IMG/VR virus record: IMGVR_UViG_3300035661_000001
Location: 248,001-312,000 of that record
DNA: 64,000 nt
Strand: one strand, 5' to 3'
The stretch's first letter is position 1, and every line of letters begins with the position of its first letter. This document shows, in pieces, positions 29,961 through 63,940 of this stretch. The notes under the pieces are model-generated. The model had not been told where the DNA came from. It saw nothing but the letters and a program-made list of their open reading frames with translations, and searched no databases. The position numbers and the translations under genes were made by a program.

Positions 29961-30944
29961 ATGGGAACCAGGGTTAAACGCGTCAGAACAAACATTTCTG
30001 CCGAGCAGATGGCTAATGCCATAACTGTTGGTTGGAAAGAGCTATTTGGCGTTACCCCTTCTAAGCAACAAGTGGCAATGGTATTAGCTCAAAATGCATT
30101 AGAAACGGGTCACAGAAAAAGCATGTGGAATTATAATGTTGGTAACATTATCACCAACGGTAATGATTCCTATGATTATTTCGACGACTTAACAACAGAT
30201 GAGCAAATAAAACCTGGAACTTGGAAAAAGATGAATCTTAAGTACAGAGCTTATCCATCATTGGATGCTGGAGTTAAGGACTATTTAAAATTCATTAGTG
30301 GTAAAAAATACAGTGGTGCTTGGAAACATATTTTGAATCCTGATCCTGTAGCTTTTTCTAAAGCTCTTAAATCAGCCGGATATTATACTGTTAATGAAGC
30401 AGCATATACAAAGACTTTATCAAAACTATATGACCAATATTCAGGATCAACCGTGAAATCTAAAATCCCTTTATCTAACATACCACAAAATGACAATAAT
30501 TTATCTAATATAATAGATAACTATTTGCAAATGGTAGCCGCTTCAGAAAAGAGCAATAAAAAATTGTATAAACAATTTTTGCCTTATCATAAATTTTTAA
30601 TTAAGATAGAATCTCAAAATTATACAGATTCTATTGAGTTTGCTCGTATAGCTTGTACAGCGTTAGAGGAAGAATTATTAGCAAAAGCTTATACCCACAC
30701 AAACGGACAATGTGTAGAAATTGAGTGTGAAATACCTGGACCACAAAAAGAATGTATAAATTTGACCAGGGAAATTTTATCATCTGTTGAAGATGCTTTT
30801 TGTGCAGCTACTAAAAAAATCGGCGGTATAGTTATAGCCACAGATTGTATTACTAATACAATTTCATCATATCAACAAATCAGTTTTAAACAGGCTGATT
30901 TTCAACGTGAACAATTTTTGCTGAAATTTAATAAGGGACAATAA
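29961..30944 (+). CDS. GH73/glucosaminidase-like peptidoglycan hydrolase with C-terminal extension
   Basis: AQNALETG, NYNVGNI, YRAYPSLDAGVKDY, ALKSAGYYT follow the FlgJ/glucosaminidase lysozyme-fold pattern. Confidence 0.75.
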   Translation: MGTRVKRVRTNISAEQMANAITVGWKELFGVTPSKQQVAMVLAQNALETGHRKSMWNYNVGNIITNGNDSYDYFDDLTTDEQIKPGTWKKMNLKYRAYPSLDAGVKDYLKFISGKKYSGAWKHILNPDPVAFSKALKSAGYYTVNEAAYTKTLSKLYDQYSGSTVKSKIPLSNIPQNDNNLSNIIDNYLQMVAASEKSNKKLYKQFLPYHKFLIKIESQNYTDSIEFARIACTALEEELLAKAYTHTNGQCVEIECEIPGPQKECINLTREILSSVEDAFCAATKKIGGIVIATDCITNTISSYQQISFKQADFQREQFLLKFNKGQ

Positions 30945-33823: not shown

Positions 33824-36800
33824 ATGTCATTTATAAAATTAGGTGAATTGATTGAAATCAACGGGATTGAAAATCCAGAATCCTGTATTCCTGCTGTCAG
33901 CGCTGAAGTATTAGAAAATTTTAGAAAAACTGCTGCTAGTTTGAAAAAAATAGCTCCTAAGGCAGAAGACTTTTTATATTTTTCCGCTGTCATGATGCAT
34001 GCTGCAGAAGCTGCTGGATTAAATGATGATGGAACTCCAAAACTGAATGCTCGTGGTGAGCAAGTTCAAGTTGGTTGGGACAAACGTGGTGGAACTTGGC
34101 GTTGGACTTCAAATGATCCAAGTATTAAACCATATAAAAATTCTAATGGCGATATCTTCCCCGAAGAAGAACTAGTTAAAGCTTATAAAAAATGGGTACA
34201 TAAACCTCTTTGTATTGATCATAAATCAAGTTCTGTAGATCATACAAGAGGTTTTATTGTTGATACTTATTATGATCGTAGTTTAAAACGTGTAATTGCT
34301 TTGTGCGCTTTAGATAAAGCCAATTATCCAGAACTAGCACGTAAAGTGTCGACCGGAATGCAAACTGCCGTATCAATGGGTACAGCGGTGGGCAGAGCAA
34401 TTTGTTCAGACTGTGCTACTGTTGCCCGCGCCGAAGCAGATTTTTGTGATCATATGAGACGCAAGAGTTGTTACGGTGAAATTAACGTTGATTTAAATCC
34501 AATTGAATTATCAATTGTTGTTAATGGTGCTGATCCAAGAGCAAATATTAAACACATTATTGCTTCAGCTACTACATTAAATTCTTATGTTGATACTAAA
34601 GTACAAGAATTGAAAAAAATAGCTGATTTACAATTTTCGGCAACGTTCTCTGTAACAGACCCCATGGGTAATGAAGGTAAACAATCAGCAGCTCATTTTG
34701 AAGTAGATGGTCATGATCTAGAAACTTTCAAAAAAGAGGTCGATGGTGCCTTTGCAAGATTAGCAGAAATCGCTGAGCAAGCAAAAAAAACCGAACAAGA
34801 TACTAATGATTCCGCATTTAATCAATCGTCTGGTTCAATTTCCATGGATGAAGGCACTTCACCTAACACTGATTCTGGATTAGCTCCGCCACATGCAAGA
34901 TACGCGTCTGTTGATTTAAACAAAATTTCTGTAGGCGAGTTACTTAAACTAACTGCTACAATAGAAACTAAATTAAATCACATGAAACAAAATTTAGATA
35001 AGTTAGCAAAATCAAATGTACATGAGGAAAATATGTCAATGAATAAAAAGAGTTACTACCAGGGTACTGAAGAGCCAACGCCTGGTCAAGCCAAGTATCC
35101 AAAGGACCCCGGTCATATGGCTTATGAAGACGATAAGCACATGCACGGTCAATCTCCTTTCCCTGGTGTAGGTCCCGTTGATGGTCTTCATCCAAGTCCA
35201 GATTCAGCAGAACAAAGCAATGAGTTAGAACGTAAAAAAATGTTAGCTCGTGCTGAAGCTGAAGAGAGAGCTATGAAACGCCAATCAATTGTTAATTTGG
35301 CAAAACAAGCTCTAGAAGATAAAAAAGCTTATTTCAACAATGGTGAAGGACCAAATAATCCTAATACACCAACCCCAGGTAAAACCAAATATCCAGTTGA
35401 CAAAGGTCATATGGCTTATGAAGATGATAAGCACATGCATGGTCAAAAACCATTCCCTGGTGTAGGTTCAGTAGATGGTCTTCACCCAAGCCCAGATTCA
35501 GCAGAGATTTCTGATGAATTAAAACGTAAAGAATTGTTACGTAGAGCTAATACTTTACATGGCAGATTTGTTACGGCTTCTAAATTCGATGGTACTAGAG
35601 ATATAAATAATAGTGCTTGGGAAATTCGTCTAGGTGACAGATTATTGTTAACAGCTTCTGTTAAAGATCTTTCTGGTGGTCGTTCCGAAATGATGTATGA
35701 TACCATCAATACAGCTGAATTTGGTAAAAGACTATTAGAAAAAGTAAAAGTTTTTGGTGCTGATAAAGTTAGTACATTATTTAAGAATGCTCAAGATCCA
35801 AATGCTGCTGCTCCTGTTGCAGCACCTGCTAGTGGTCCTGCTGATGCTGGTCCCCTAGGCAATTCGCCTGCAGAAGATACTGGTAAATCTGGTGATCCAA
35901 AAGAATCGGCTCTTGAAATGGCTGAAAAAGTTAGAGACATGTCTTCTGATTTAGTTGAAGCTGTCAGGGCTTTAACTGGTGAACAAGCTGAAATGGGCGC
36001 TGATATGGCTGCACCAGGAATGGCTGCTACTGCTTCTGATTTTAGTAGCGTTCATATGCATGCGCTAAGAGGCGAAATTAATGGATCATTAAATCATGCT
36101 ATGAGAGAAGTCGTAGCTGAATTAGAAGAGCATCAAGAAGAACTAGATACAATTGTTGGGTTATATGATAAGGGTGCAGTTACTGCTTCTAATGAAGAAT
36201 TAATTGAATCACTTTTAGATGACGCAACTGTTGCTGCCAAATCTGCCGTTGCAGATGGCTTTAGATTAATGACCGCTTTTGTTAAGTATGCTCGTGGCAC
36301 TAAGGCTATTATTAAACGTGCTGAAATAGAGGCAGAACTTAATGCTTTAAGTGATAACGAAGGAGATACAACAATGAGTGGTGGTGATGATAGTTTAATG
36401 GCTCTGATCGACAGCACTAATTCAGATCTGAATTCTGTTAGAGAAATGATGGATGAAAACGGTGAACCTGGTCTTGGCACAGATGGTGATGGCGAAGGGT
36501 TTGACGGACTTGAAGAACAAGTTAGCGAAAATGACGGATTAAGCGGTGATGGCTTATCAGATCTTGAATCTGACCCTCTTGCAGAAGAAGGTGATGATCT
36601 ATTAGCTGATGATGATAATGATCTTATGGCTAAAAAAGAAGAATTGAAAGATCTTGATTTAAAGCCAGGAACTACTGTTCAAGTTACTGCTGGTTTCAAT
36701 TCTAGAGCCAGCCGCGCCGCTCTTCGTGCTAAACTTGCAGCTGACGCACTTGGTTCATATGGATCTGATCCAACTGGAAAACAAGATGATGGTCAATTAC

Positions 36801-37483
36801 AAGATGCATCAAAAATTAAATTCTACGATATGTTAGATACTGCTGATAGTCAAGCAACTACTAGTAGGGTCCCAAATGTAGATAATAAATCTTCTGATAA
36901 TCTTGATGTAATTGAGACTCTTCCAGAAATTAATAAAGCTATGTTGGATCTTGCCAAAGCTCCACCTAAGGTTCGTAAAGAAGCTGAAGCTATTCATAAA
37001 TTAGTTAGTGAAGGTAAATTAGATCGTTCTGATCTTGATGCCCTAGTAGCTGAAGGTTTGGATAAGGATGCGGTTTCTTATTACAAAAAATACTACGGTC
37101 AAACAGACGGCGGTGGTGAATTTGCCAGTGAATTGGTAAAAGAACATGTTAAGGCTCAATTAGAAGAAGAGCTTAATAGATACAAAGTCAAAATGGCTAG
37201 AGCTTATGAAGTAGCATATGATATGGTTGACCGTGGATTATGCCATAACGATAAAATCGCCGTCGCTTCACAAGTTGAAGAAATTATGAAATTCAATGAC
37301 GACAGTTTCGATACTTTGAAAAGAGTAGTTGCTAAACACTCTCCAGTAATGCGTAAAGAAGCTGGTCGCATGCCACAGGTTGGTTTATTCGGTTCCGGTG
37401 AAAACACTGTAGCCTCTCCAGCCGAAGATGATTGGTCTTTATTGTCTGCAGCATTTGCTAAGACTTCTAAGAGAATGTTTTAA
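33824..37483 (+). CDS. Prohead maturation protease fused to large scaffold/core region (1219 aa)
   Basis: DIFPEEEL, CIDH (His), AVSMG (Ser), ELSIVVNGADP typical of herpes/HK97-fold prohead proteases; CSDC...FCDH insert; acidic, helical C-terminal part; between portal and capsid. Confidence 0.82.
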   Translation: MSFIKLGELIEINGIENPESCIPAVSAEVLENFRKTAASLKKIAPKAEDFLYFSAVMMHAAEAAGLNDDGTPKLNARGEQVQVGWDKRGGTWRWTSNDPSIKPYKNSNGDIFPEEELVKAYKKWVHKPLCIDHKSSSVDHTRGFIVDTYYDRSLKRVIALCALDKANYPELARKVSTGMQTAVSMGTAVGRAICSDCATVARAEADFCDHMRRKSCYGEINVDLNPIELSIVVNGADPRANIKHIIASATTLNSYVDTKVQELKKIADLQFSATFSVTDPMGNEGKQSAAHFEVDGHDLETFKKEVDGAFARLAEIAEQAKKTEQDTNDSAFNQSSGSISMDEGTSPNTDSGLAPPHARYASVDLNKISVGELLKLTATIETKLNHMKQNLDKLAKSNVHEENMSMNKKSYYQGTEEPTPGQAKYPKDPGHMAYEDDKHMHGQSPFPGVGPVDGLHPSPDSAEQSNELERKKMLARAEAEERAMKRQSIVNLAKQALEDKKAYFNNGEGPNNPNTPTPGKTKYPVDKGHMAYEDDKHMHGQKPFPGVGSVDGLHPSPDSAEISDELKRKELLRRANTLHGRFVTASKFDGTRDINNSAWEIRLGDRLLLTASVKDLSGGRSEMMYDTINTAEFGKRLLEKVKVFGADKVSTLFKNAQDPNAAAPVAAPASGPADAGPLGNSPAEDTGKSGDPKESALEMAEKVRDMSSDLVEAVRALTGEQAEMGADMAAPGMAATASDFSSVHMHALRGEINGSLNHAMREVVAELEEHQEELDTIVGLYDKGAVTASNEELIESLLDDATVAAKSAVADGFRLMTAFVKYARGTKAIIKRAEIEAELNALSDNEGDTTMSGGDDSLMALIDSTNSDLNSVREMMDENGEPGLGTDGDGEGFDGLEEQVSENDGLSGDGLSDLESDPLAEEGDDLLADDDNDLMAKKEELKDLDLKPGTTVQVTAGFNSRASRAALRAKLAADALGSYGSDPTGKQDDGQLQDASKIKFYDMLDTADSQATTSRVPNVDNKSSDNLDVIETLPEINKAMLDLAKAPPKVRKEAEAIHKLVSEGKLDRSDLDALVAEGLDKDAVSYYKKYYGQTDGGGEFASELVKEHVKAQLEEELNRYKVKMARAYEVAYDMVDRGLCHNDKIAVASQVEEIMKFNDDSFDTLKRVVAKHSPVMRKEAGRMPQVGLFGSGENTVASPAEDDWSLLSAAFAKTSKRMF
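35111..35505 (+). repeat. Intragenic direct repeat, two 101-nt copies (35111-35211, 35405-35505)
   Basis: 90/101 identical by manual alignment; encodes GHMAYEDDKHMHGQxPFPGVGxVDGLHPSPDSAE. Confidence 0.92.
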
Positions 37484-39710: not shown

Positions 39711-40628
39711 ATGCATTTTATATACAAAATAACAAATCAACTAGATGGAAAAAATTATATTGGTCAAACCATTAATCCAAATTATAGATGGTATCAACAT
39801 CGCTCTTATGCCGGTGTCACCAATAAACATAAACAATATATTCATTACGCCATGTCAAAACATGGTATTGAAAATTTCATTTTCGAGGTGATTGCTACAT
39901 GTTTAACGCAAGATGATGCTAATGAAACTGAAACTGCCGTAATTAAACAATATGACAGTATGAATAATAATCATGGCTACAATTTAAAATGCGGTGGAGT
40001 AAACGGTTCCTTTTCTGAAGAAACTCGCCAAAAACTAAGTAAATCATATTCAAAATATATTGCTGAACATGGGCACCCAGCTTTAGGAACTAAAAGAACT
40101 CCAGAACAAATACAAAATTTAATACAAGCCCGTAAAGACCATCCAGTTGAATATACTGATGAAATACGACAACGAATATCTGATGCTCATAGAGGTAAAC
40201 CATTATCTGAAGAGCATAGAAATAATATGGTGGAGGCTATCAAGAAGGCGAAAACAGAAAAAGCTGAAGCAAGATACATTTCTGAAGATATTAAATGCTC
40301 AGTTGATGGTTGTAAAATTAAAGGAAAAGCAAAATATCGTCTTATAGATGATATTAGATATTGTGCAAAACATGGATTAAAAATGCAACGAAATGGAAAT
40401 TTGGATCCAAAGCCTAAATCAAAATATAATAAAGATAATCCAATGCCAGAAGAACAACGTAAAAAATGTGGCGTTGGTAACATTGGAAGAGTTGCTCATA
40501 ATAGAATTGTATTTTCTGATGAACAAATAAAAACAATATTAGTTGACTCACGATCTGCCAGAAAGATAGCTAAAGCTTTTGGAGTAACTGAAAAGGTTAT
40601 TTTAAGGATCTGGGCTGGCAAATACTAA
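39711..40628 (+). mobile_element. GIY-YIG homing endonuclease (NUMOD3-like repeats, Cys/His finger, HTH)
   Basis: FIYKITNQLDGKNYIGQT, HGYN, CSVDGC...YCAKH. Confidence 0.9.
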
Positions 40629-40696: not shown

Positions 40697-41800
40697 ATGA
40701 CTTTTAAGCACATAAAATTCGATGATTCTTTCACTATGCGTTCACTTGAAAAAGTGGCTAGAGATAAAGGATGGATTCACGAAACTCCAGCAACTAAGAT
40801 TGCTGTTTTACAAGAAACTGATTTTTCTATTTCTAACAATTTAACAGAAAATGTTATGAAATTGTGTGTAGGGCTGCGTGCTTCAGGCATGTATAAATAT
40901 GCTGATGAAGTTGAGCAGAAATTTATGCATTATAAGCAAGCTCAAACACTATATGAAACTTCTAAAGAAAAAGGAGAGGACTTAGTAGATGAGGCTCATC
41001 CTAAAGGATCTCATAAATTAAGTGGTATTGAAGGTGATAGTTTAATAGAAACCATTGTAGATCAACATTTAGCTGGAATTAAACTAACAGAGAAAAAACC
41101 TACTGGAAAATTAGCTGCTCTTAATACATTAAGAGCAGTTAAAAACGTTTTATCACAAGCTGCAAATCCTACAACCGCACAATATCTTAATATTGTGCTG
41201 AAAAATGTACAAAATATTTTTGGTTTACATGAAGAGACTCCTTGGATTTTTAGAACAGATAATTATGGTAAAGATAATTTGATTGAATTAATTCAACAAG
41301 CCATTAGTAATACGAATAATGTTGAAATGTTAGATCAATTACTTCCAAGAATTAAATTAGGAATTGATAAGTTTTATAAAACATTCAAACCAGGTATAGT
41401 AGGTGGTGTTTCGGATGAAACTTGGGCAGGTATGACGCCTTTATTTAGTAAAGCTTATGGGGCATTTGCTGTTGCAAAAAAATCTGTAGATGAAAAACCA
41501 GTAGTATCAGCGGCAGTTCCTGCCGAAGTATCGGCACTTATTAAATGGATCGCTAACGCTAAATCTATGTTAAAAAAATGGGAAATGATTATTAGTTCTG
41601 ATCCTGAAAGAGAAACTGACGATAAAGAAAAAGCTTTATCTTGGATTTCTCAAAAAATGGCACAAGTAGCAAATATAGATAGTAGATTTCAATCTTTAAA
41701 TGATGAAGAAAAAATTTCTAGTGCAATGGCATTATTAAATAATCTGAAAAAAATTACCACTCCTAGTTTTAGTCAATTTAAAACTAATTGGGAACTTTAA
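40697..41800 (+). CDS. Putative internal head/ejection protein
   Basis: KIA|V and YKQA|Q motifs; DLVDEAHP domain shared with 45643. Confidence 0.55.
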   Translation: MTFKHIKFDDSFTMRSLEKVARDKGWIHETPATKIAVLQETDFSISNNLTENVMKLCVGLRASGMYKYADEVEQKFMHYKQAQTLYETSKEKGEDLVDEAHPKGSHKLSGIEGDSLIETIVDQHLAGIKLTEKKPTGKLAALNTLRAVKNVLSQAANPTTAQYLNIVLKNVQNIFGLHEETPWIFRTDNYGKDNLIELIQQAISNTNNVEMLDQLLPRIKLGIDKFYKTFKPGIVGGVSDETWAGMTPLFSKAYGAFAVAKKSVDEKPVVSAAVPAEVSALIKWIANAKSMLKKWEMIISSDPERETDDKEKALSWISQKMAQVANIDSRFQSLNDEEKISSAMALLNNLKKITTPSFSQFKTNWEL

Positions 41801-41809
41801 GAGGAGTAT

Positions 41810-42967
41810 ATGTCTGAAAAATTAGATTTGATTAGAAAGTATGCTCAGGAAGCTGAAGCACCTGTTCCTGTACCTTCCAAGAAAAAAAATAAACCAGCAG
41901 AACCAGCAACGGCTGCCGCCGCTGCTCCAGTAGTACCAAATAGTGATGTTCCTGTACCATTAGCAAAGAAATTTTCTCCAGAATTAAAAAACAGATTACA
42001 AGGTAAACCTAAAGTACAACCAGGTAATTCTCCACAACAAATTGCGGCAGCCAGAGAAGCTGTTAAAGAAATGCAAATTGCTATGCAAGAATTAGCAGGA
42101 GCAGTAATTACTGATTCTGAATCTGGAACTATGGCTTATAAACCTCATGACGCCCAACAACCTGGTGCTGCGCCAACAGTTAAAAGTTCTAAAAAAAGTT
42201 TTAATGATTTTATAACTGAACAATATTTGGGTGGATTGGATGAAGATAAAAAAGGTGTAGAGTGGAATACTGATCAAAAAGTCACTTCTTTGCAAGGAAA
42301 AAAACAAACACAAACTGATTTATATGAATTAGATGTTGTAATGAATACGCTTCGTAGAATTGGAGCGTCCAGTAAAGAATTTATTGCCGACGGTAAATGG
42401 GATTTTAGAACTGATAATGCATTAAGAAACATTATGGGTTTTTCTTATGCCTTATTACAATTAGAAGGAGATTTTGGGTTAGAAAATAATTTTTATAGTT
42501 TTGATCACTGGAAAAATTTTAATAAAGCACTTACAGGTTATAAAATAAGTAACGGTATTGTTCAATTAAATGCAGCACAAAAAGTTGCAAGAGCAAATGC
42601 TATTAATAAACATTTAAAAGCTATTACTAAACTTTATTCTCATTTTAGACAACAAGTTCTGGCTAGACCAGAATTCAGACCTACTATTGAAGGTAAAAGA
42701 TTAATTGATAGATATTCTGCTCAAGGATCAAATAAAGATGTTTTAACTTCCCAAGAAGATCAAATGTCTAAATCTGATGCGATCAAAATACCAGTTACTT
42801 ATCCGGCACCTAAATTACCCGGTGGTAATTTAGATTATATTCCATTAAAAGCTTTAAGAGATAAAGGTGAATATATAAAATGGATGGTCGGTTATGCTGG
42901 TAATTCTGAGCAAGCAGCAACTGATATTTTTAATAAAACTATCAAACCTAAAATCGAAACAACCTAA
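41810..42967 (+). CDS. Putative internal head/ejection protein
   Basis: IRKYA|Q near N-terminus, then Ala/Pro linker. Confidence 0.55.
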   Translation: MSEKLDLIRKYAQEAEAPVPVPSKKKNKPAEPATAAAAAPVVPNSDVPVPLAKKFSPELKNRLQGKPKVQPGNSPQQIAAAREAVKEMQIAMQELAGAVITDSESGTMAYKPHDAQQPGAAPTVKSSKKSFNDFITEQYLGGLDEDKKGVEWNTDQKVTSLQGKKQTQTDLYELDVVMNTLRRIGASSKEFIADGKWDFRTDNALRNIMGFSYALLQLEGDFGLENNFYSFDHWKNFNKALTGYKISNGIVQLNAAQKVARANAINKHLKAITKLYSHFRQQVLARPEFRPTIEGKRLIDRYSAQGSNKDVLTSQEDQMSKSDAIKIPVTYPAPKLPGGNLDYIPLKALRDKGEYIKWMVGYAGNSEQAATDIFNKTIKPKIETT

Positions 42968-42975
42968 GGTGAAAC

Positions 42976-44523
42976 ATGTCTTTTTTATACGAAATATTTG
43001 ATGAAGCTATGAGCCAGGCGGCTCTTGATAAAATTCTAAAAAAAACGGCACAGGTAGCTCAAACGCCTTTATCTCCAAATGATGTTGCTAAAAAATTAGT
43101 TAATCGTTTGTCAAGAGAAATGTCTGCCGCACCGGAACCATTAAATATTGCTTCAGAAACAGCTACGCCCATTGATTTAAATATCAATGATTTGCAATCA
43201 TTAGGCAAACTATTACAATTTATGTCTAATAATAAAATAAAATTGGACGGTTCTAGAATTGTTTATTCTGAAGCTGATGTAAATTCTTTGCCCGAAGAAG
43301 AACGAAATCAATTAGCTCCTATAACTGTTAATTTATCTCGTGATGCTGCTAGTAGAAAATGGAATACTGCAGATTATTATTCTAAACTACCACTGTTAAT
43401 TAAATATGTGTCTTATCTTCAAGAAAAAGCACAATCACTTAAAAAAAGTGGAGATGCTCAAGGCAAAATTTTAGAAGTCATGGTTGGTAAATTAATAGAT
43501 TCAATAAATAATGTTAAACCTGATTCAGGATTGTCACGTGTACCAAAATCTCAACCTGATAAGCCAAATGAATTACCAGACAATACAGTTATAGATACTT
43601 TTGGGTCAAAAGTATTTAATATAGCTGACCCTTATGCAGATAAGGGTGATATGCCATTAAGTAGCAAAGATTTATCTTCTAAAGAATCATTAAATGCTTG
43701 GTTAAAACAAGCGCCTGAAGCTACAATTCTATATGGACAAACCCTTAATAAATTTACTGATCCGGCTGCTAATCATTGTAATATAATAAATGTTTTATAC
43801 AAGCGAGCTTATAATTTAAAAAATACGGCATCTCCAGCTGATTCTAAAAAATATAATTTTTATTTAAACAAAATCATTCAACTAGGACAATTATTTACTG
43901 ATCCTTCTGGAAGTGCATGTACTATTGGCGGTACAGGTAGTAGTGGAGTTCATAATAGACATAATTTTTATGGTCCTTCTGGACAGGGAGATGATGGATC
44001 CGGTGGTAAAACTGGGGTATCAAGCCAAATACTAGAACAAATAATACAGACTTTACCATTTGATACTCAAGATATAGATTTCATTAGAATTAAGAATTTC
44101 TTTTCATTGTATACTAAAGTTACATCCAGTAATTATGTTCAATCAGCTATTACGTCTATGGGCGAGGCTTTAAAAGCTATGGCTACGGCAAGTGAGTCTA
44201 CTTTAACTGGTAATCAAGAGAAATTTAGAATTACTAGAAATGTTCAAGAGATGGCAACTTGGTTAAAACAACCTGCTGGCAATCATGCTTTACCTTTCCT
44301 GTATGCTCTTCAACAAGTTCTTACAGAAACAGAAAAAGTATTAGGAATGTTTTATAGCGAATATGCTAGAACATTATATTCAGGTGATGCAGTAAGATTA
44401 ACTAATGAGCAAAAAGCTTTGGTGGAAGCTCAATATCTTGGGGGGAATTCTATCTTCTCTCAAAATTTAAGAGATGTTCAATCATTGATGGCAAATACTC
44501 AACAAGTTTTAGGTAAAAAATGA
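42976..44523 (+). CDS. Putative internal head/ejection protein
   Basis: ILKKTA|Q near N-terminus; 515 aa. Confidence 0.55.
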   Translation: MSFLYEIFDEAMSQAALDKILKKTAQVAQTPLSPNDVAKKLVNRLSREMSAAPEPLNIASETATPIDLNINDLQSLGKLLQFMSNNKIKLDGSRIVYSEADVNSLPEEERNQLAPITVNLSRDAASRKWNTADYYSKLPLLIKYVSYLQEKAQSLKKSGDAQGKILEVMVGKLIDSINNVKPDSGLSRVPKSQPDKPNELPDNTVIDTFGSKVFNIADPYADKGDMPLSSKDLSSKESLNAWLKQAPEATILYGQTLNKFTDPAANHCNIINVLYKRAYNLKNTASPADSKKYNFYLNKIIQLGQLFTDPSGSACTIGGTGSSGVHNRHNFYGPSGQGDDGSGGKTGVSSQILEQIIQTLPFDTQDIDFIRIKNFFSLYTKVTSSNYVQSAITSMGEALKAMATASESTLTGNQEKFRITRNVQEMATWLKQPAGNHALPFLYALQQVLTETEKVLGMFYSEYARTLYSGDAVRLTNEQKALVEAQYLGGNSIFSQNLRDVQSLMANTQQVLGKK

Positions 44524-45599
44524 GTCACAGTAACAGTGAAATAAGGTTCTATGTAGATAGTTTAATTGTAGAAACTATTTTAAAAAATAAAAACCTATAT
44601 AAACAAGCTGATGCTGGCGGGATGGTTGCGTCTTTAATAGATAAAGTAAAAGAATATGTTGGAAATCATATTGATCCAAATGATAAATCCGGAAGTTTAA
44701 TTAACATTTTAGGTCCTGGTGCTATTTCAGTTGCGTTTGCATCTATGAGTCTTGGATGGCTTGGAATTTTAATTGGTTTGTCCATGAGAGTTTTTAATAT
44801 TGATGTCAAGGGCATTATTAGTTCTATTTGGGGTAAGTTAAAACCAGCTATTTCTGGGGACAAACAAATTTCTTCTAAAACAGTTGATTCATTTGTTGAA
44901 TCATCAGTGCAAGAAAATTATCAACCCGCAACTCCAGAAGAAGCCGAAAAAGCTGCTAACTTAATAAAAGCTAAATCTAGTGCCATATTAAATGATGCAA
45001 AATTTGTCAAGATAGCTATGATAAATTTTAATAACGGAACTTTAACTAAAGAAGCCGGCTTTTTTGATATGTTTAATTCTCATAAAACTAATATAGTTAA
45101 TATATTAACTAGAGTTCTAAGCTGGGTGTTTAAAGTAGCTTTAGCATCAGCTGGTCTAATGGTAGCCGGAGATGTTGTTAATAAGTTTTTGAATAGACCA
45201 AACGCCATAGATGGTACTATACAGAAAGGTCACCCAACAGAAACGGTTTCCGCAGCGCCGATTAATGTCTCTAAACAGAAAAAATTTCCAGTAAAATCTG
45301 GATATGTTTCAGAAAAATACAATATTGGTGAATCTATTTGGTCAGAAGATATTAGTAATGATCCTGGATCAATAGAAAATATGTTGATTGATTTTGCTAA
45401 AGATGTATATGATGGTTTAAATGGAAAAGAAAATATCATAAGAACTTCTCCGGCATTTCAAGTAGTTAAAGATAGAATTGTTTGGTACAATCATACCAGC
45501 CCACGAGCACCTATGGTTTGGTTGCCTAGATATTTTTCCTCAAAAAAACAAATAGTAGACTATTTCATTGATGATGTTGCTGACAGAACCACTACATAA
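44520..45599 (+). CDS. Putative ejection protein with hydrophobic segments
   Basis: LYKQA|D (res 28-30), LTKEA|G; hydrophobic stretch res about 60-89 and a second after KEAG. Confidence 0.55.
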   Translation: MSHSNSEIRFYVDSLIVETILKNKNLYKQADAGGMVASLIDKVKEYVGNHIDPNDKSGSLINILGPGAISVAFASMSLGWLGILIGLSMRVFNIDVKGIISSIWGKLKPAISGDKQISSKTVDSFVESSVQENYQPATPEEAEKAANLIKAKSSAILNDAKFVKIAMINFNNGTLTKEAGFFDMFNSHKTNIVNILTRVLSWVFKVALASAGLMVAGDVVNKFLNRPNAIDGTIQKGHPTETVSAAPINVSKQKKFPVKSGYVSEKYNIGESIWSEDISNDPGSIENMLIDFAKDVYDGLNGKENIIRTSPAFQVVKDRIVWYNHTSPRAPMVWLPRYFSSKKQIVDYFIDDVADRTTT

Positions 45600-45642
45600 G
45601 CCAGTATATTTTTACCAAATAAATTTAACATGAGAGAAACGA

Positions 45643-46863
45643 ATGAGCAATAGTGACGTTTTAAATAATTTTATCAAAATAGCGCAAGAGAAGGGCTTAA
45701 TTTCAGATAAAGCTCCAGAGAAAGCAAAACAAATTCTGGAAAAAACACGTCGTGCCGATTCATTAAGTGTTGCTGATATAGAAAAACTATATGGCATTAA
45801 ACCTGATATGGCAAAAGACAATAAATATGATAGAAATATTGTTGAAGATGCACATCCAGAATCATACGTTGCTTCAAATGCTCATGATAAATTAAACGGT
45901 TTAGTAGAGAATATTAATCAAAGACAAAATATTATCTTGCATATTCTTGATAAAACTCCTAATGGACATTTAACTCAACACAAATATGCTGAAAAAGATT
46001 TAATCTTATCTTTGGTTAGAATTGGAAATGATTTAGATAATAAAAATAAAGAAAATTTAAGAGTTTTAGCTGATGCTTGTTTAATGCAAGTTAGTAAGCC
46101 TATGAAAAAAGAAGGTGCGTGGGGATTATTAGCAATTCCTGTTTTACTAGGGGCATTATATTTACAACAACATATGAATTTTACAAATGAAGGTTTTGAA
46201 AAAAATCATCAAAAACTTTCTGCAGAGATCGATGATTTATTACAATCTAGTTCTTCATGGGGAGTTGGATATGATTATAAATCTGATTTCAAAACTATGT
46301 TACAAGATTTTAAATTAAAATTGGATGGTTTTTATGAGTTATACTCAAAAACAACTTCTGTAATATCAGATTTGGAAAAACCAAGAACTGCACAAGATTT
46401 GATAGAGTTATCAAAACATCCTCAAACAGATTCTGTGGTTAAAGCTTATGGTGCGTTAAAAGCGGCAGCAGATAATATGTTACCATACATAAATACTATT
46501 GAAAAAAACTTTTCATCTGAAGCTTATAAAGCCCGCCAAATAGAAGATAAAGGATTTATGTCTTCCTTAGTTGATCGTGTTCATGTTTTACATGGTGGTA
46601 AAGGAATGGTTGCAGATGATTTTGATGATGTTGTAAGAGTTATAAGTCCTTACAAGCAATCTATTAAAGAATTACTTGATTTATTAAAAAATGCTGAATC
46701 AATAGAACAATCTGCTCAAACAAAAATACAGGAAGCCTCTTCAGGAATTCCAAATGAAAAACCTGTTCCAAGTGCTGCTCCTCAAAATAAATCTAAAAAA
46801 CCTCACAGCATGGATGCTGAAGTTGAACAATTAGAAAAAGATTTAACTGGCGGATTACTTTAA
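45643..46863 (+). CDS. Putative ejection protein
   Basis: FIKIA|Q, HKYA|E, MKKEG|AWGLLAIPVLLGALYL. Confidence 0.55.
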   Translation: MSNSDVLNNFIKIAQEKGLISDKAPEKAKQILEKTRRADSLSVADIEKLYGIKPDMAKDNKYDRNIVEDAHPESYVASNAHDKLNGLVENINQRQNIILHILDKTPNGHLTQHKYAEKDLILSLVRIGNDLDNKNKENLRVLADACLMQVSKPMKKEGAWGLLAIPVLLGALYLQQHMNFTNEGFEKNHQKLSAEIDDLLQSSSSWGVGYDYKSDFKTMLQDFKLKLDGFYELYSKTTSVISDLEKPRTAQDLIELSKHPQTDSVVKAYGALKAAADNMLPYINTIEKNFSSEAYKARQIEDKGFMSSLVDRVHVLHGGKGMVADDFDDVVRVISPYKQSIKELLDLLKNAESIEQSAQTKIQEASSGIPNEKPVPSAAPQNKSKKPHSMDAEVEQLEKDLTGGLL

Positions 46864-46982: not shown

Positions 46983-47678
46983 ATGTTAAAACTTTTACAA
47001 CCAGGCACACAGCCTTTAGGTCAATATGACGGTCTTGATTCAGAATACTTAACTTTGAAGGGTGGCGAGATTGTTAGTTTCGCATCCGTTGTAGCAACAT
47101 CTGCTACTGACAAAGGTGCAAAAGATGTATTTGATGGTTATTTAAATCCTTCTTCAGTTCAAAAAAGAGTTGTTGTTACCAGAAACGTAGCTACAACCAA
47201 AAGACCATTGATGTTATCAGATGATGGTATTTCTGGTTATGGAACTTTGTTTGGTTCTGTAGTTGGTGGAGTAGTTGGTCAACAAGTAATTAATGGTGTG
47301 GTTCTTGGACCTCACACTGCTTTAGGTTCTGGCAAAGTTACTTGCTGGGATAAACAAGGTCTTTATGCCGTGTCATTAGACGCTTGTGATACAGCAACTG
47401 TGGACGGTCTACAACCAACCAATACTACTTTGGATACCGGCGCTTCATTAACTTGGGTACCAGCTAGCACAACTGGCGGTCAATTAACTCCAGTTGGTAG
47501 CACTGCTGCTGCTGGTAATACAGTAGTTGTTGGTCACTTTGTTGACTTCGAGACCAATGGTTCTCTTGTCACTACACCAAATAATTTGGTTGCTGCTCTT
47601 AATCCACCTAACGGTACATTAGGAACAGTTGCTGGAAGCTTCAGCTTCGCTGTATTTCACTTCAATCCACAATACTAA
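46983..47678 (+). CDS. Putative capsid decoration/cement protein (paralog 2)
   Basis: Directly upstream of major capsid gene; Gly/Thr/Val-rich beta protein. Confidence 0.6.
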   Translation: MLKLLQPGTQPLGQYDGLDSEYLTLKGGEIVSFASVVATSATDKGAKDVFDGYLNPSSVQKRVVVTRNVATTKRPLMLSDDGISGYGTLFGSVVGGVVGQQVINGVVLGPHTALGSGKVTCWDKQGLYAVSLDACDTATVDGLQPTNTTLDTGASLTWVPASTTGGQLTPVGSTAAAGNTVVVGHFVDFETNGSLVTTPNNLVAALNPPNGTLGTVAGSFSFAVFHFNPQY

Positions 47679-47702: not shown

Positions 47703-47732
47703 GAAAAGAGCCAGAATATTCTGGCTCTTTTC
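47703..47732. terminator. Intrinsic terminator (30-bp perfect palindrome)
   Basis: GAAAAGAGCCAGAAT|ATTCTGGCTCTTTTC followed by ATTTT. Confidence 0.85.
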
Positions 47733-47872: not shown

Positions 47873-48886
47873 ATGAATATGTTTAGTAATCAAGGGCAAA
47901 TGAATGCTTCTTCAATGAAAGATGTTTTACTTCAATTAGTAAAATACGCTTCAATTCTTGAAGAGAATCAACCAGCCAACATGGGTCTAGCTGGTCAGGT
48001 ATCCTTGAGCGATGATAAACGCGACGAATTGATTTCTCGTGCTATCATGACTCAAGATGGTAAAATTGCTTTAGCCCAAGCAATGGCAAATCCAATTCGT
48101 AGAAACTTAGATTACCACGGTATTTCACGTCGTGCATTAGTTGTTGATCCTCTTCCACAAGGTGCTCAACCAACTTACGATAGAGATATCGATGTATCTG
48201 CTGTAGTTATTTCTTCTAACGGTACTGGACCAGAGTCTAGAGTTTTCGGTGATAGAGTAGTAGTACCTACCTTCGAAATCTATGCTAACCCAACTGTTAG
48301 AATTTCCGAAGTTAGACGTCGTAGATTCAACGTTATTGACCGTGCCGTTCAAAAAGCTCGTCAAGAAATAATGGCTCAAGAAGATGCGAACGTTTTCGCA
48401 GCTCTTGATGCTGCTGCTTCAGTAGAAAATACTCTTACTGATATTTCTGATGCTGGTCTTTTGAAGAGAGATCTTGTTGAAATCAAGGCTCAAATTGATC
48501 GTTGGGACTTAGTGACTACTAAATACTTTATGAATATCAATGAATTTACCGATATTCTTAAATGGGGTAGCGGTGGTGGACAAGGTGTTGGTGGTGGTGA
48601 TTTCGATCCTGTCACAATGAGAGAAGTTCTACAAACCGGTCTTTACGCCCATATCTGGGGTACTGATATTATGGTAAGCAAGATCGTTCCACCAGGAACC
48701 ATCTATGGCTGTGCCGATCCTGAATTCGTTGGTGTTATGCCAATTAGACAAGACATCGAAGTTCTTCCTGCTGATGAACCAAAACAATTAAAACTTGGTT
48801 GGGTTGTAAGCGAAGAAATCGGTATCGCGATCGTCAATCCTCGTGGTGTTTCTGCTGGTCGTAAATCTGTAACCATCGGTTCCTAA
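47873..48886 (+). CDS. Major capsid protein (HK97-like fold)
   Basis: 337 aa; AMANPIRRNLDY...VVDPLPQG, RFNVIDRAVQKARQEIMAQED backbone helix, LKLGWVVSEEIGIAIVNPRGV C-terminus; strong RBS, flanked by terminators. Confidence 0.88.
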   Translation: MNMFSNQGQMNASSMKDVLLQLVKYASILEENQPANMGLAGQVSLSDDKRDELISRAIMTQDGKIALAQAMANPIRRNLDYHGISRRALVVDPLPQGAQPTYDRDIDVSAVVISSNGTGPESRVFGDRVVVPTFEIYANPTVRISEVRRRRFNVIDRAVQKARQEIMAQEDANVFAALDAAASVENTLTDISDAGLLKRDLVEIKAQIDRWDLVTTKYFMNINEFTDILKWGSGGGQGVGGGDFDPVTMREVLQTGLYAHIWGTDIMVSKIVPPGTIYGCADPEFVGVMPIRQDIEVLPADEPKQLKLGWVVSEEIGIAIVNPRGVSAGRKSVTIGS

Positions 48887-48920
48887 TACAAATATCTAAC
48901 ACTAACTTAGTGTTATCGTG

Positions 48921-48954
48921 AATAAGAGTCACTTGCAAGGTGACTCTTATTTTA
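48921..48954 (+). terminator. Intrinsic terminator after capsid gene
   Basis: AATAAGAGTCAC-7nt-GTGACTCTTATT plus TTT. Confidence 0.88.
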
Positions 48955-58350: not shown

Positions 58351-58674
58351 ATGAGCTTTAAAATTGATGCGACAGACCCGGCTAATCTCAAGAGTACTGC
58401 CCTCTCAGAGAGAGAAACTAGAAAACGTCTTTTAACTCATGCCCGGTTATTGGGATTTGAGAAAGATATGTTATTATTATTTGCTAAAGCAGATAAGCAA
58501 ATACGTAATTGTACTAATGAAAAAGAAAAACAAGATATTGGTAAAATGTATAGTATATTGATATATAAATTATTAGGAGGAGGTGGTCAATTATATATTG
58601 ATGGAAATTTAGTATGTGATGATGAACCAAAAAATAATGAGAATAATTTATATATACCACAATCGAGTAAATAA
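58351..58674 (+). CDS. Hypothetical protein
   Basis: 107 aa; last 12 codons lie inside the downstream GIY-YIG gene. Confidence 0.65.
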   Translation: MSFKIDATDPANLKSTALSERETRKRLLTHARLLGFEKDMLLLFAKADKQIRNCTNEKEKQDIGKMYSILIYKLLGGGGQLYIDGNLVCDDEPKNNENNLYIPQSSK

Positions 58675-59350
58675 TAAAATTTATGTTGGACAAACTTTTG
58701 ATTTAAATAAAAGAATAAATGGTCATAAAAGCGAAACTTTTAGTAGATTACGAAATCATCCTTTTTACAATGCTATAAGAAAATATAATTTGAATAATTT
58801 TGATATTGTAGAACTAGAAAATATTGAAGATAATTGCGCTGATGATCGTGAAGCATTTTATATTCAATATTTTAAGAGTTATGACAGAAATTACGGCTAC
58901 AATATAGAATTGGGTGGGTGTAAAAATAAGATAATTTCTGAAGAAACTAAGAAAAAAATTTCTGATGCCAATGTTGGAAAATGTTATAATACATTAGAGC
59001 ATATGGAAAAATTACATAAAATGACTGGTGATAGATTGCGCGGCACACATTTGTCACAAAAAATTAAAAAGAAAATTTCTGAATCACGTATGGGTTTTAA
59101 ACATACTGAAAAAACAAAACAAAAAATGTCAGAAACTAGAGTCAAAGGGGGTACGTTTGCCGGAAACAAAAATCCTAATTTTGGAAAAACTGGAAATTTA
59201 AATCCGGCAACCAAATTAAATTGGGAAATTATTAATAACATTAGGCTAGATTATTCTTTAGGTCTCAAAGGTAAAAAACTAATGAAAAAATACAATATTA
59301 GTGAAACTAATATGTATAGAATACTTAAAAATGAAATTTGGAAAGTATAA
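58637..59350 (+). mobile_element. GIY-YIG homing endonuclease with NUMOD3-like repeats
   Basis: Probable start ATG 58637: MRIIYIYHNRVNNKIYVGQT; YGYN; HTEKTKQKMSE; C-terminal HTH. Confidence 0.88.
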
Positions 59351-62243: not shown

Positions 62244-63143
62244 ATGTCAATTAAAGCTCGTGGGGAAGTTATTGATGTTACAGATCAAGTTAATTTAACT
62301 GTTCAATTCAAAGACACAGTAGGTAATCCTATAGATACTGATTCATTTCCTCAAGTGTCCATAGTCCAGCCTAGCGGTTTACTTGCGCTTGCACCTACCT
62401 CAGCCGGGGTCGCTAAAGTTGGCGCAGGTAAATACTCATTTATTTATACAATCCCTATTAATGGACCCTATGGAGTGTTTAACGATATTTGGAGTGGTTT
62501 TATAAATGGTTTCCATATAGAAACTACTTTTTCTTTTATCGTAATACATACTCAGACTCCTGCTATAAACACTGACGGATATATGCATTTAGGAGATGAT
62601 GTACCTTTTAATTATTCTCAATGTGCGACTTTAAATATTAATAAATTAATCAAGTCTCTTAAAGCTAGATTAAATAGTTCTGGCAAAGCTAAATCAACAG
62701 ATTCATATGGAAACGTTGTCTATGTAGATTGTGATATTTTTTCTATTGATATGTTGACTACATTTTTAGCTACTGCATTGTGGGATTTTAATCAAGTTCC
62801 ATATTTTACAGGGTTCACATTTGATGATGATGGTTTCGTTGATCAGTTTGGGGAAATTTTAGTTGAATATGCTACACTACAAGCTTTAGCATCTAAAGCT
62901 TTAATAGAAAGAGGTCGTGAATTTCAATTCACAGATAATGGATTGAATTTTAATCCACCTACAGTAAGCGAATTAATGACTACACAGTATAGTACGTTAC
63001 TGAGTCACTACTTCGAAAAACTCAAGATGATCAAAGCGTCACTTCGTCCTAGCCCGAAAGGATTAGGTATATGGGGTATGACAAATGGAGCTAATCCGGC
63101 ATTCAGAAGATTACGTCACTTGAGACAAAGACAGATAATTTAA
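62244..63143 (+). CDS. Putative neck/head-tail adaptor with N-terminal Ig-like domain
   Basis: N-terminal GKYSFIYTIP...GVFNDIW; C-terminal helical domain (FSIDML...ALWDFNQVP, TDNGLNF). Confidence 0.55.
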   Translation: MSIKARGEVIDVTDQVNLTVQFKDTVGNPIDTDSFPQVSIVQPSGLLALAPTSAGVAKVGAGKYSFIYTIPINGPYGVFNDIWSGFINGFHIETTFSFIVIHTQTPAINTDGYMHLGDDVPFNYSQCATLNINKLIKSLKARLNSSGKAKSTDSYGNVVYVDCDIFSIDMLTTFLATALWDFNQVPYFTGFTFDDDGFVDQFGEILVEYATLQALASKALIERGREFQFTDNGLNFNPPTVSELMTTQYSTLLSHYFEKLKMIKASLRPSPKGLGIWGMTNGANPAFRRLRHLRQRQII

Positions 63144-63940
63144 TGTCGAACTCTAGTTACGCCATCCAAGAAATTTTGTTTAGAGGAATAAGGTCTCAAA
63201 TTATCTAAAGCCCAACATTTCTTAAAATTATCATCTTCCATAGAGATATATTTAAATGTTGATTTTGGAATGATATGATCTATCTGCCATGTCCATGTAG
63301 ATTGATCATCATCATTCCATTTTTTTGCATTATATGCTCCATGATTTTTCCATGTCATCCACGGCTCAAATAATGATTCTAAATGTAATTTTAATATTAA
63401 TATTGAATACTGCAGATAATCTAAACAAGAATTTCCGCCTTTAGATGATCCATTAGATTTCAAATGGAAATTTATATTAGCTGATACTGTAGTTCTAATT
63501 TTGAAATTTGTATTTGTTAATCTTTTATTTTTATTGTAGAAATTACTATATATTCTAATACTGTTTTTATTTTGTATATAATATTTTTTTGCGCCACATA
63601 TAAGTGTTTCTTTATTATTTTGATAATATAGTTTATTATAATCCTGTTTTTCTTCTTTATGTTCTTGATAGTATTCTTTTCTATCTTCGATTATCTCTTT
63701 TTTGTTTTCCTGATAGTATTCTTTTTTATCTTGTAATATTTTTTCTTTATTTTCTTTATAATAGGACGCATCATAGTCTGACTGATATTGTTTCATTTTT
63801 TCTAAATTTTTACTTTTAAATTCACGCATGTAGTTAGTGTTGCATTCTCTGCACCAACCGCCGCTCTTTTTGTAGTGAGATTCTGAAAAATCTTTTTTGT
63901 TTTTGAAATCTTTGCATTTGCCGCATTTTTTATTATTCAT
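63140..63940 (-). mobile_element. HNH-family homing endonuclease, paralog of 5801-6529
   Basis: CGKC...CREC, five to six 15-aa repeats, WQIDHIIP...NLRPY. Confidence 0.85.

What the first reader, a model, noticed from the sequence alone, without database searches (positions are those of the whole stretch)
40697..46863. Candidate ejection/membrane-channel operon with hydrophobic segments unmasked by cleavage
Seen: five co-oriented 360-515 aa genes, all with N-proximal K-x-A sites. In 45643 a site (KEG, res 156-158) is followed at once by AWGLLAIPVLLGALYL. In 44520 a hydrophobic stretch (res about 60-89) follows KQA|D and another follows KEA|G. Known: T7 and P22 package ejection proteins that form a trans-envelope conduit. 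Inferred: pro-domains keep membrane-active segments soluble until head maturation.
Basis: partly seen in the sequence, partly recalled or inferred. Interest (0 to 1): 0.66.

Follow-up and report, generated by a model that had tools for sequence, protein, structure and literature searches.

The report
Protease-tagged megaphage head-core proteins
Five unknown genes next to the capsid gene of a 452-kb uncultivated phage all carry the same short N-terminal tag as the capsid protein and the head protease, so they are probably packed into the young head and trimmed there; two would be cut just before membrane-type helices, but there is no evidence that they form a T7/P22-style DNA channel.

Summary
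The window lies in a complete 452-kb myovirus genome distantly related to Bacillus phage G. Genes at 40697, 41810, 42976, 44520 and 45643 (g1-g5) sit between a protease-scaffold fusion gene and the major capsid gene. They form one terminator-free block.

All five carry a hydrophobic-x-K-x-A motif within their first 30 residues. This motif occurs at the N-terminus of 13 of 20 head-module proteins against 30 of 541 other proteins (p = 2.6e-11). It is conserved in every orthologue, flanks the protease domain on both sides and recurs along the scaffold extension.

Only g4 and g5 have membrane-type hydrophobic helices. Each helix is preceded by a conserved internal copy of the motif in a predicted flexible linker.

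None of the five proteins matches any Pfam or PHROG family. The two that were modelled (g4, g5) match no solved fold convincingly.

My reading: these are prohead core or internal head proteins, tagged for the prohead and trimmed by the head protease. g4 and g5 may be latent membrane-active proteins primed by that cut. Cleavage, virion location and membrane activity are all inferred. A T7/P22-like trans-envelope conduit is not supported: there is no homology and the genome encodes a tail sheath.

The parts
33824..37483 (+). Prohead protease (residues about 45-255) fused to a scaffold-like extension of about 960 aa. Motif copies: FRKTA 33920-33934, LKKIA 33941-33955 and LKKIA 34610-34624 flank the catalytic domain.
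   Evidence: PHROG head maturation protease and 34% identity to phage G gp19. H133 and S184 are invariant in 27 orthologues, and the motif is conserved on both sides of the domain. About 10 further conserved motif copies lie along the extension.
39711..40628 (+). GIY-YIG homing endonuclease inserted upstream of the block. It is not part of the block.
   Evidence: Pfam and PHROG hits. Absent from the related locus L004.
40697..41800 (+). g1, 367 aa, tag LEKVA at 40745-40759. No hydrophobic segment. Its N-terminal ~140 aa weakly resemble the N-domain of g5.
41810..42967 (+). g2, 385 aa, tag IRKYA at 41831-41845, followed by a Pro/Ala-rich linker and a conserved C-terminal domain.
42976..44523 (+). 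g3, 515 aa, tag LKKTA at 43036-43050, with a variable Gly-rich central linker. Its stop overlaps the g4 start by 4 nt.
44520..45599 (+). g4, 359 aa. Tag LYKQA 44595-44609; hydrophobic region 1 (residues 57-92) 44688-44795; internal motif LTKEA 45042-45056; hydrophobic helix 2 (residues 195-220) 45102-45179; well-folded C-terminal domain (residues 250-359).
45643..46863 (+). g5, 406 aa. Tag FIKIA 45670-45684; conserved N-domain (residues 15-153); internal motif MKKEG 46102-46116; hydrophobic helix (residues 159-175) 46117-46167, which opens a long four-helix bundle (about residues 162-366).
46983..47678 (+). 231-aa protein in the position of the phage G decoration protein. It has no N-terminal tag and is followed by a 13-bp-stem terminator-like hairpin at 47703-47732.
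47873..48886 (+). Major capsid protein, 337 aa. It has an N-terminal extension of about 41 aa that phage G gp27 lacks. The extension carries the tag LVKYA at 47936-47950.
   Evidence: PHROG major head protein; 54% identity to phage G gp27 from residue 45 onward. The tag is conserved in five relatives.

Best explanation
g1-g5 are clade-specific prohead core or internal head proteins of a phage-G-like megaphage.

How it most likely works:
1. Each protein starts with a short helical tag ending in hydrophobic-x-K-x-A. The capsid protein, the protease-scaffold fusion and most other head-module proteins carry the same tag.
2. The tag most likely takes the protein into the assembling prohead, as the T4 capsid-targeting sequence does.
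3. The head protease then removes it, cutting after the Ala. Herpesvirus assemblin cuts in the same way at (V/L/I)-x-A|S.
4. The same motif separates the protease domain from its scaffold extension and recurs along that extension, so maturation would also dismantle the scaffold.
5. g4 and g5 carry a second, conserved copy of the motif in a flexible linker just before conserved hydrophobic helices. Cleavage there would split each into two fragments. The g5 C-terminal fragment would begin directly with a hydrophobic helix.
6. These two proteins are therefore the best candidates for latent membrane-active proteins that leave the head with the DNA and act on the host inner membrane.

Shown: gene order, the motif with its statistics and conservation, the hydrophobic helices, and the disorder of the linkers in the models.

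Inferred: targeting, cleavage, the exact scissile bond, presence in virions, ejection and membrane activity.
For: Position. The genes lie between the protease fusion and the capsid gene, tightly spaced, with a 4-nt overlap of g3 and g4 and no terminator-like hairpin in the + strand intergenic gaps before 47703. The order is kept in six related contigs and in a distant relative.

Motif enrichment. 13/20 head-module N-termini against 30/541 elsewhere, p = 2.6e-11.

Motif conservation. It is invariant in orthologues that are only 45-70% identical overall. In 139 diverse g4 relatives it is present in 89% (N-terminal copy) and 83% (internal copy).

Motif around the protease. Copies flank the catalytic domain (33-37, 40-44, 263-267), and about 10 more conserved copies lie in the scaffold extension of 27 orthologues. 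Invariant His133 and Ser184 fit an assemblin-type Ser/His protease.

Phage G. Its portal gp14, protease gp19 and gp9, gp13 and gp20 carry the same N-terminal motif.

Linkers. In the AlphaFold models the motifs lie in segments with pLDDT below 50: g4 residues 23-33 and 153-179, g5 residues 153-164.

Hydrophobic helices. They are conserved in position across the families.

Evolutionary rate. The five proteins are 59-73% identical to relatives whose capsid proteins are 93-94% identical. Rapid divergence of this kind is described for ejection proteins (PMC8954989).

Precedent. [quoted passage not shown] T7 gp16 keeps its transmembrane regions globularly folded inside the virion (PMC8954989).
Against: - There is no direct evidence of cleavage, virion association or membrane binding.
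- No proteomic data exist for this clade, and the phage G virion proteomics paper (PMC7316594) is not held.
- The complex prediction of the protease with the g5 tag gave no answer.
- The g5 N-domain, which the internal cut would release, is the most conserved part of the protein. It has a function of its own and is not a mere mask.
- The K-K before the g5 helix would also fit the ordinary positive-inside rule for a true membrane anchor.
- The g5 helix in this genome is short (about 16-17 residues; dG 6.3 against a family median of 2.6).
- The phage has a contractile tail, so no head-derived membrane protein is strictly required for DNA entry.
- The resemblance of g5 to ClyA-family toxins is within the noise for helical bundles.
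Confidence: 0.45

Rival explanations
1. The five are pure scaffold or core proteins. They build the large prohead core, are cut at the motif and leave the head or are degraded before DNA packaging. The hydrophobic helices only pack the core together, and the proteins do nothing after ejection.
For: They occupy the scaffold position, between the protease and the capsid gene. g4 and g5 are modelled as largely helical, and g2 and g3 have low-complexity linkers. The motif recurs in the scaffold extension. They evolve fast, as scaffolds do. g1-g3 have no hydrophobic segment. In T4, gp22, gp67 and gp68 behave this way (PMC5694885).
Against: The 1219-aa fusion already supplies a scaffold-like extension of about 960 aa. 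g1-g5 each have only one or two conserved motif copies, not many, so large folded fragments would survive. Scaffolds are not expected to conserve Gly/Ala-rich membrane-type helices across more than 500 sequence clusters.
Confidence: 0.2
2. g4 and g5 are true inner-membrane proteins that tether the nascent prohead core to the membrane, as T4 proheads are membrane-bound. Cleavage at the motif next to the helix releases the prohead from the membrane.
For: The motif sits exactly at the junction of the soluble domain and the helix in g5. The K-K on the N-side and the uncharged QQH on the C-side fit an N-in signal anchor. g4 ranks among the most hydrophobic ORFs in the genome (15 of 561 have a lower dG minimum). 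T4 proheads are released from the membrane after gp21 cleavage (PMC5694885).
Against: The protease works inside the shell, so a site at the membrane face would be hard to reach. The first hydrophobic region of g4 is modelled as three short helices inside a bundle, not as a spanning helix. No such tether is known in a head module.
Confidence: 0.15
3. The motif is a binding or helix feature that is not cleaved, and g4 and g5 are non-virion membrane proteins (lysis, exclusion or similar) that merely sit in the head module.
For: In phage G the stretch between protease and capsid gene holds an endolysin and two small, very hydrophobic proteins, gp24 and gp25. K and A are common helix formers.
Against: At 359 and 406 aa, g4 and g5 are far larger than typical holins. 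The glucosaminidase gene lies 10 kb upstream. The tag is shared with the capsid protein and the protease and flanks the protease domain. The g3-g4 overlap and the conserved g4-g5-decoration-capsid order argue for a head function.
Confidence: 0.1
4. One reading: the five genes form a T7/P22-type ejection operon that builds a trans-envelope DNA conduit.
For: The proteins are helical and fast-evolving, and two have membrane-type helices.
Against: No homology or fold match to gp14/15/16 or gp7/20/16. The genome encodes a tail sheath. Three of the five have no hydrophobic segment. The genes lie upstream of the capsid gene.
Confidence: 0.05

Closest known systems
T4 internal proteins and core proteins with a capsid-targeting sequence (IPI-III, Alt, gp67, gp68), processed by gp21
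   Same: They are encoded with the head genes. A 10-30-residue N-terminal tag ends in the protease motif. The same motif is found in the capsid protein, the protease and the scaffold. The protease is of the assemblin type, with conserved Ser and His.
   Different: The motif is hydrophobic-x-K-x-A, not L/I-x-E. The proteins are much larger (360-515 aa) and unrelated in sequence. Two have an internal motif before hydrophobic helices. Cleavage is not shown here.
phiKZ / SPN3US internal head (ejection) proteins with propeptides, cut at A/S/G-x-E
   Same: Jumbo myovirus. Several unknown head proteins are processed at a shared short motif, some with a tag near residue 12-15 and a second site more than 100 residues in (PMC5694885).
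   Different: No PF12699 or other family match. The capsid and protease lineage is different (phage G-like). Only a weak hint of paralogy, between g1 and g5.
Herpesvirus UL26 protease-scaffold with release and maturation sites (V/L/I)-x-A|S (own knowledge)
   Same: The protease is fused to the scaffold. A motif ending in Ala lies at the boundary between protease and scaffold and again further on. P1' is often Ser, Ala, Gln or Asp.
   Different: This describes the neighbouring 1219-aa gene, not g1-g5. Lys is fixed two residues before the Ala. No sequence similarity was shown.
Maturation-primed membrane-active capsid peptides of non-enveloped animal viruses (adenovirus protein VI, nodavirus gamma peptide; own knowledge)
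   Same: This is the working analogy for g4 and g5: the capsid protease cuts next to a hydrophobic or amphipathic helix and so arms it.
   Different: No homology. The arrangement has not been described for tailed phages as far as my searches went. It is purely inferred here.
T7 gp14/gp15/gp16 and P22 gp7/gp20/gp16 ejection proteins
   Same: They are helical and fast-evolving, and some members carry transmembrane regions yet are soluble inside the virion (PMC8954989).
   Different: Those are podovirus proteins in a three-gene set. There is no similarity in sequence or fold, and this phage has a contractile tail.

Membership tests
T7/P22-type ejection (pilot) proteins | Sequence or fold similarity to gp14/15/16 or gp7/20/16 | tested here: not met
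   No Pfam or PHROG hit. Foldseek and VIA searches gave no such match. Cyanophage A4 pre-ejectosome scored only Z 4.3 for g4, which is noise.
T7/P22-type ejection (pilot) proteins | Short-tailed virion that needs a head-derived trans-envelope channel | tested here: not met
   The genome encodes a 927-aa ORF that matches Phage_sheath_1C above the cut-off. The nearest cultured relative by capsid protein, phage G, has a contractile tail (PMC8570332).
T7/P22-type ejection (pilot) proteins | Predicted transmembrane regions in the outer- and inner-membrane members | tested here: inconclusive
   g4 has two membrane-type segments and g5 one marginal segment. g1-g3 have none.
T7/P22-type ejection (pilot) proteins | Present in virions and ejected into the cell | not testable with these tools
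   No proteomic or infection data. Only DNA runs from microbial mat and sediment hold the sequence.
Prohead-protease-processed internal/core head proteins (T4 CTS type) | Encoded in the head morphogenesis module | tested here: met
   Order: terminase 24728, portal 26669, protease fusion 33824, g1-g5, capsid gene 47873. The order is conserved in relatives.
Prohead-protease-processed internal/core head proteins (T4 CTS type) | Short N-terminal tag ending in a motif shared with the capsid protein, protease and scaffold | tested here: met
   Hydrophobic-x-K-x-A in 13/20 head-module N-termini, p = 2.6e-11. It is also on the capsid protein, flanks the protease domain and recurs in the extension.
Prohead-protease-processed internal/core head proteins (T4 CTS type) | Actual cleavage at the motif by the phage protease | not testable with these tools
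   The complex prediction of the protease domain with g5 residues 1-45 gave no answer. No mass spectrometry is available.
Prohead-protease-processed internal/core head proteins (T4 CTS type) | Assemblin-fold Ser/His prohead protease in the same module | tested here: inconclusive
   PHROG head maturation protease E = 6e-13; 34% identity to phage G gp19; invariant H133 and S184. No Pfam or PDB sequence hit, and the fold was not modelled.
phiKZ inner-body protein family (PF12699) | Match to PF12699 | tested here: not met
   No Pfam hit, even at E = 10.
ClyA-family alpha pore-forming toxins | Elongated helical bundle with a hydrophobic membrane-insertion element, at significant structural similarity | tested here: inconclusive
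   For g5 residues 162-366: ClyA at Foldseek E about 0.05, TM 0.25-0.3; AhlB Z 9.2, YaxB 8.5, MakE 8.4, XaxA 7.8. All are below the level of about 13 that the tool gives for helical bundles, and generic four-helix bundles score higher.
Holins / lysis membrane proteins | Small (usually under 220 aa) membrane protein next to an endolysin | tested here: not met
   g4 is 359 aa and g5 406 aa. The only lysin-like gene (29961-30944) lies 10 kb upstream.

The most novel reading that the evidence does not exclude
Phage-G-like megaphages may use their capsid maturation protease to arm membrane-active proteins stored in the head. Cleavage at hydrophobic-x-K-x-A would give a g5 fragment whose new N-terminus is a fusion-peptide-like helix, and g4 fragments with buried hydrophobic hairpins. 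After ejection these would remodel or breach the host inner membrane. That would be a phage counterpart of adenovirus protein VI or the nodavirus gamma peptide. The same motif would also allow the whole head-internal proteome of an uncultivated clade to be read from sequence.
Probability: 0.25. Interest if true: 0.75.

Novelty: new variant of a known kind. Interest (0 to 1): 0.55.

Why it matters
Megaphages of this lineage are abundant in metagenomes. The g4 family alone comprises 561 sequence clusters, and the protease fusion has 842 relatives. Only phage G is cultured, and almost nothing is known about how their very large heads are built or what they inject.

A short, statistically robust tag would mark which proteins enter the prohead. 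That gives a sequence-only way to predict the head-internal proteome and the specificity of the protease. It also gives a handle for packaging foreign proteins, as the T4 targeting sequence does.

If g4 and g5 really are protease-primed membrane-active proteins, that would be a new step in myovirus infection, and the peptides and fragments needed to test it are well defined.

Tried and rejected
- Family scans. Pfam and PHROGs found nothing for g1-g5, even at E = 10.
- Cultured relatives. tblastn of g4 and g5 against 50,697 GenBank phage records gave no match. Megablast of the region gave none.
- Paralogues. HMMs of g1-g5 found none in the genome and no relative in phage G bases 9298-38119.
- Profile against PDB sequences. 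The g2 profile hit only a designed coiled coil.
- My idea that g2 residues about 190-215 form a PG_binding_1 domain. PF01471 searched over the whole genome did not hit g2, so I dropped it.
- ESM Atlas look-alikes gave nothing usable.
- Fold searches. The g4 model gave nothing (Foldseek E >= 0.3; VIA Z <= 5.7). The g5 model gave only generic helical bundles.
- Complex prediction of the protease domain (45-262) with g5 (1-45): no answer, score 0.02. This counts neither for nor against binding.
- Overall K-x-A density, corrected for composition, is only 1.5-fold raised in the head module (76 observed, 50 expected). The signal is positional, not a matter of composition.
- Mycobacteriophage Myrna, a distant relative by capsid and protease, does not clearly show the motif, so it is not general to the wider capsid family.
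- Literature. The phage G virion proteomics paper is not held. I found no paper describing a K-x-A protease motif.
- Sequencing runs. Only DNA runs hold the region, so I did not use read laying.

Full report
**Context**

- The window is bases 248001-312000 of a complete 451,956-bp virus genome with direct terminal repeats and 36.5% G+C.
- Its major capsid protein (47873-48886) is 54% identical to gp27 of Bacillus phage G, the only cultured megaphage.
- The genome encodes a contractile-tail sheath.
- Near-identical DNA is held only by microbial-mat and sediment metagenome runs. No RNA run holds it.
- The head module reads: large terminase 24728, portal 26669, a 456-aa protein, a glucosaminidase-domain protein 29961, several small ORFs, a 1219-aa protein 33824-37483, small ORFs, a GIY-YIG homing endonuclease 39711, the five genes of the finding, a 231-aa protein 46983, and the capsid gene.
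- In the 1219-aa protein, residues about 35-252 match the phage G prohead protease gp19 and a PHROG head maturation protease.

**The observation**

- The five ORFs (g1 40697-41800, g2 41810-42967, g3 42976-44523, g4 44520-45599, g5 45643-46863) are as described.
- They are tightly spaced: gaps of 9, 8 and 43 nt, and a 4-nt overlap of g3 and g4.
- No terminator-like hairpin lies in the + strand intergenic gaps between 40697 and 47700. Strong hairpins follow the 46983 gene (47703-47732) and the capsid gene (48920-48952). One transcription unit is therefore plausible.
- Every protein has an N-proximal K-x-A.
- When the sites are lined up, the motif is longer: LEKVA, IRKYA, LKKTA, LYKQA and FIKIA in g1-g5, LVKYA in the capsid protein, and FRKTA and LKKIA in the protease. 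That is hydrophobic-x-K-x-A, usually followed by a polar residue.

**Is it more than chance?**

- I took 561 non-overlapping ORFs from the whole genome. The motif lies in the first 45 residues of 13 of 20 head-module ORFs and of 30 of 541 others (odds ratio 32, Fisher p = 2.6e-11).
- The 5.5% background is about what I estimate from typical residue frequencies, so the tag appears specific to the head module.
- Overall K-x-A density, corrected for composition, is only 1.5-fold raised there. The signal is positional.

**Conservation**

- IMG/VR holds six related contigs, up to 446 kb long. They keep the order g1-g5, the 231-aa gene, then the capsid gene. The five proteins are 59-73% identical where the capsid protein is 93-94% identical.
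- The N-terminal motif is invariant in all of them.
- g4 and g5 have 233 and 360 relatives in the word search. All are 'hypothetical' with no Pfam domain, on contigs up to 472 kb.
- A profile search of 1.84 billion representative proteins finds 561 g4 clusters, nearly all full-length.
- In 139 diverse g4 relatives, the N-terminal motif is present in 89% and an internal motif just before the second hydrophobic helix in 83%.
- A distant contig keeps the g4-g5 pair with all four motifs.
- In phage G, the portal gp14, the protease gp19, and gp9, gp13 and gp20 carry the same N-terminal motif. Phage G gp27 lacks the N-terminal extension of about 41 residues that carries it here.

**The protease gene**

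- In 27 orthologues the catalytic region (about residues 45-255) is about 80% identical, with invariant His133 and Ser184.
- It is bracketed by conserved motif copies at 33-37, 40-44 and 263-267.
- About ten more conserved copies lie along the otherwise faster-evolving C-terminal extension of about 960 residues.
- This layout matches the herpesvirus UL26 protease-scaffold, whose assemblin cuts at (V/L/I)-x-A|S at the protease/scaffold boundary and near the scaffold end (my own knowledge). It also matches T4 gp21 acting on gp22 and on the capsid-targeting sequences of the internal proteins (PMC5694885).
- This is the main reason I read the motif as the maturation cleavage site, probably cut after the Ala. 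It remains an inference.

**Hydrophobic segments**

- Only g4 and g5 have them.
- g4:
  - Residues 57-92 are a Gly/Ala/Ser-rich hydrophobic stretch: Kyte-Doolittle 19-residue mean 1.93, and Hessa-type dG 0.5 kcal/mol. I took the Hessa scale values from memory.
  - Residues 195-220 give dG 3.3 kcal/mol.
  - Only 15 of 561 ORFs in the genome have a lower dG minimum than g4.
- g5: residues 159-175 give dG 6.3 in this genome, against a family median of 2.6.
- Both features are conserved in position across the families, although the sequences drift.
- In g5 the columns 154-158 read [ILMF]-K-K-x-[AG] in about 85-98% of 45 relatives and abut the helix.
- In g4, L175-x-K177-x-A179 is kept in 38/43 relatives and lies 15 residues before the second helix.

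**Structure models**

- AlphaFold2 models were built on 43-45-sequence alignments (g5 mean pLDDT 63.7, g4 74.0).
- All these motifs fall in segments with pLDDT below 50.
- g4 has a helical N-domain in which the first hydrophobic stretch forms three short helices, not one spanning helix. A long helix 180-210 follows, then a confident C-terminal domain (pLDDT above 90).
- g5 has a conserved N-domain and a long four-helix bundle (about residues 162-366) that the hydrophobic helix opens.

**What they are not**

- No Pfam, PHROG, PDB-sequence, Foldseek, VIA or Atlas result identifies any of them.
- ClyA-family pore formers recur among the g5 hits (ClyA, AhlB, YaxB, MakE, MakB, XaxA). Their scores (Z 7.8-9.2) are lower than those of generic four-helix bundles and below the tool's own bar for helical proteins. 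I treat this as a lead only.
- The five families are not detectably related to each other, with one possible exception. The N-terminal ~120-140 residues of g1 and g5 align collinearly (hhalign E = 0.005, probability 7%) and share a [LI]-V-[DE]-[ED]-A-H-P motif found nowhere else in the genome.

**Interpretation**

- The best-supported reading is that g1-g5 are prohead core or internal head proteins that carry a targeting-and-cleavage tag.
- g4 and g5 would in addition be split at an internal site next to hydrophobic helices.
- Whether the resulting fragments are ejected membrane-active proteins (my preferred reading), expelled scaffold pieces, or the remains of a membrane tether cannot be decided here.
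- The T7/P22 conduit analogy fails on homology, on tail type, and on the absence of hydrophobic segments in three of the five proteins.

**Limits**

- Both structure-prediction jobs went to g4 and g5, so g1-g3 and the protease are not modelled.
- The single complex job gave no answer.
- The phage G proteomics paper could not be read.

Noticed in passing
window 33824-37483: The prohead protease is fused to a scaffold-like extension of about 960 aa. The extension contains a tandem duplication of about 65 residues (around residues 416-480 and 513-577, '...KYP.D.GHMAYEDDKHMHGQ.PFPGVG.VDGLHPSPDSAE...') and long acidic stretches. The fusion has 842 relatives of about 1100-1250 aa. One relative (P0335, 1565 aa) carries intein and homing-endonuclease Pfam domains. 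Mycobacteriophage Myrna gp97, annotated 'tape measure', is a homologue of this protease fusion.
   Followed up: partly
window 39711-40628; also 12425-13276 and 58616-59350: Three paralogous GIY-YIG homing endonuclease genes. The one upstream of g1 is absent from the related contig L004 and diverged or broken in L005, so it is a mobile insertion in the head module.
   Followed up: partly
window 47873-48886: The capsid protein has a conserved N-terminal extension of about 41 residues (MNMF..QLVKYA|S...) that phage G gp27 lacks. It is a likely short propeptide.
   Followed up: partly
window 29961-30944: A glucosaminidase-domain protein (PF01832) lies inside the head module, just after the portal and a 456-aa gene. 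It has no N-terminal tag. It could be the endolysin or a virion-associated lysin.
   Followed up: no
window 40697-41120 and 45643-46020: The N-terminal domains of g1 and g5 share collinear motifs (K-[VI]-A-[RQ]-[DE]-K-G-[WL]-I, [LI]-V-[DE]-[ED]-A-H-P, K-x-P-[TN]-G-[KH]-L). This suggests an old duplication of a domain of unknown role.
   Followed up: partly
L001 (phage G 9298-38119), gp24 and gp25: In phage G the stretch between the protease and the capsid gene holds an endolysin (annotated as joined from two pieces) and two small, very hydrophobic proteins, not homologues of g1-g5. The content of this slot has turned over within the lineage.
   Followed up: no
window 5801-6529 (+) and 63140-63940 (-): Two ORFs are 50% identical over 189 residues on opposite strands. 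The coding strand and the GC/AT skew switch near 60 kb.
   Followed up: no
window 14292-15905: A 537-aa ORF of unknown function upstream of the terminase has the strongest overall K-x-A excess in the genome (12 observed, 4.2 expected). It may be another protease substrate encoded outside the head module.
   Followed up: no
g4 relatives P0401, P0416, P0425, P0458, P0474, P0481: Longer g4 relatives carry insertions of variable length at about residue 147-153. That is the low-confidence linker holding the internal motif, which fits a two-domain protein joined by a flexible, cleavable linker.
   Followed up: no
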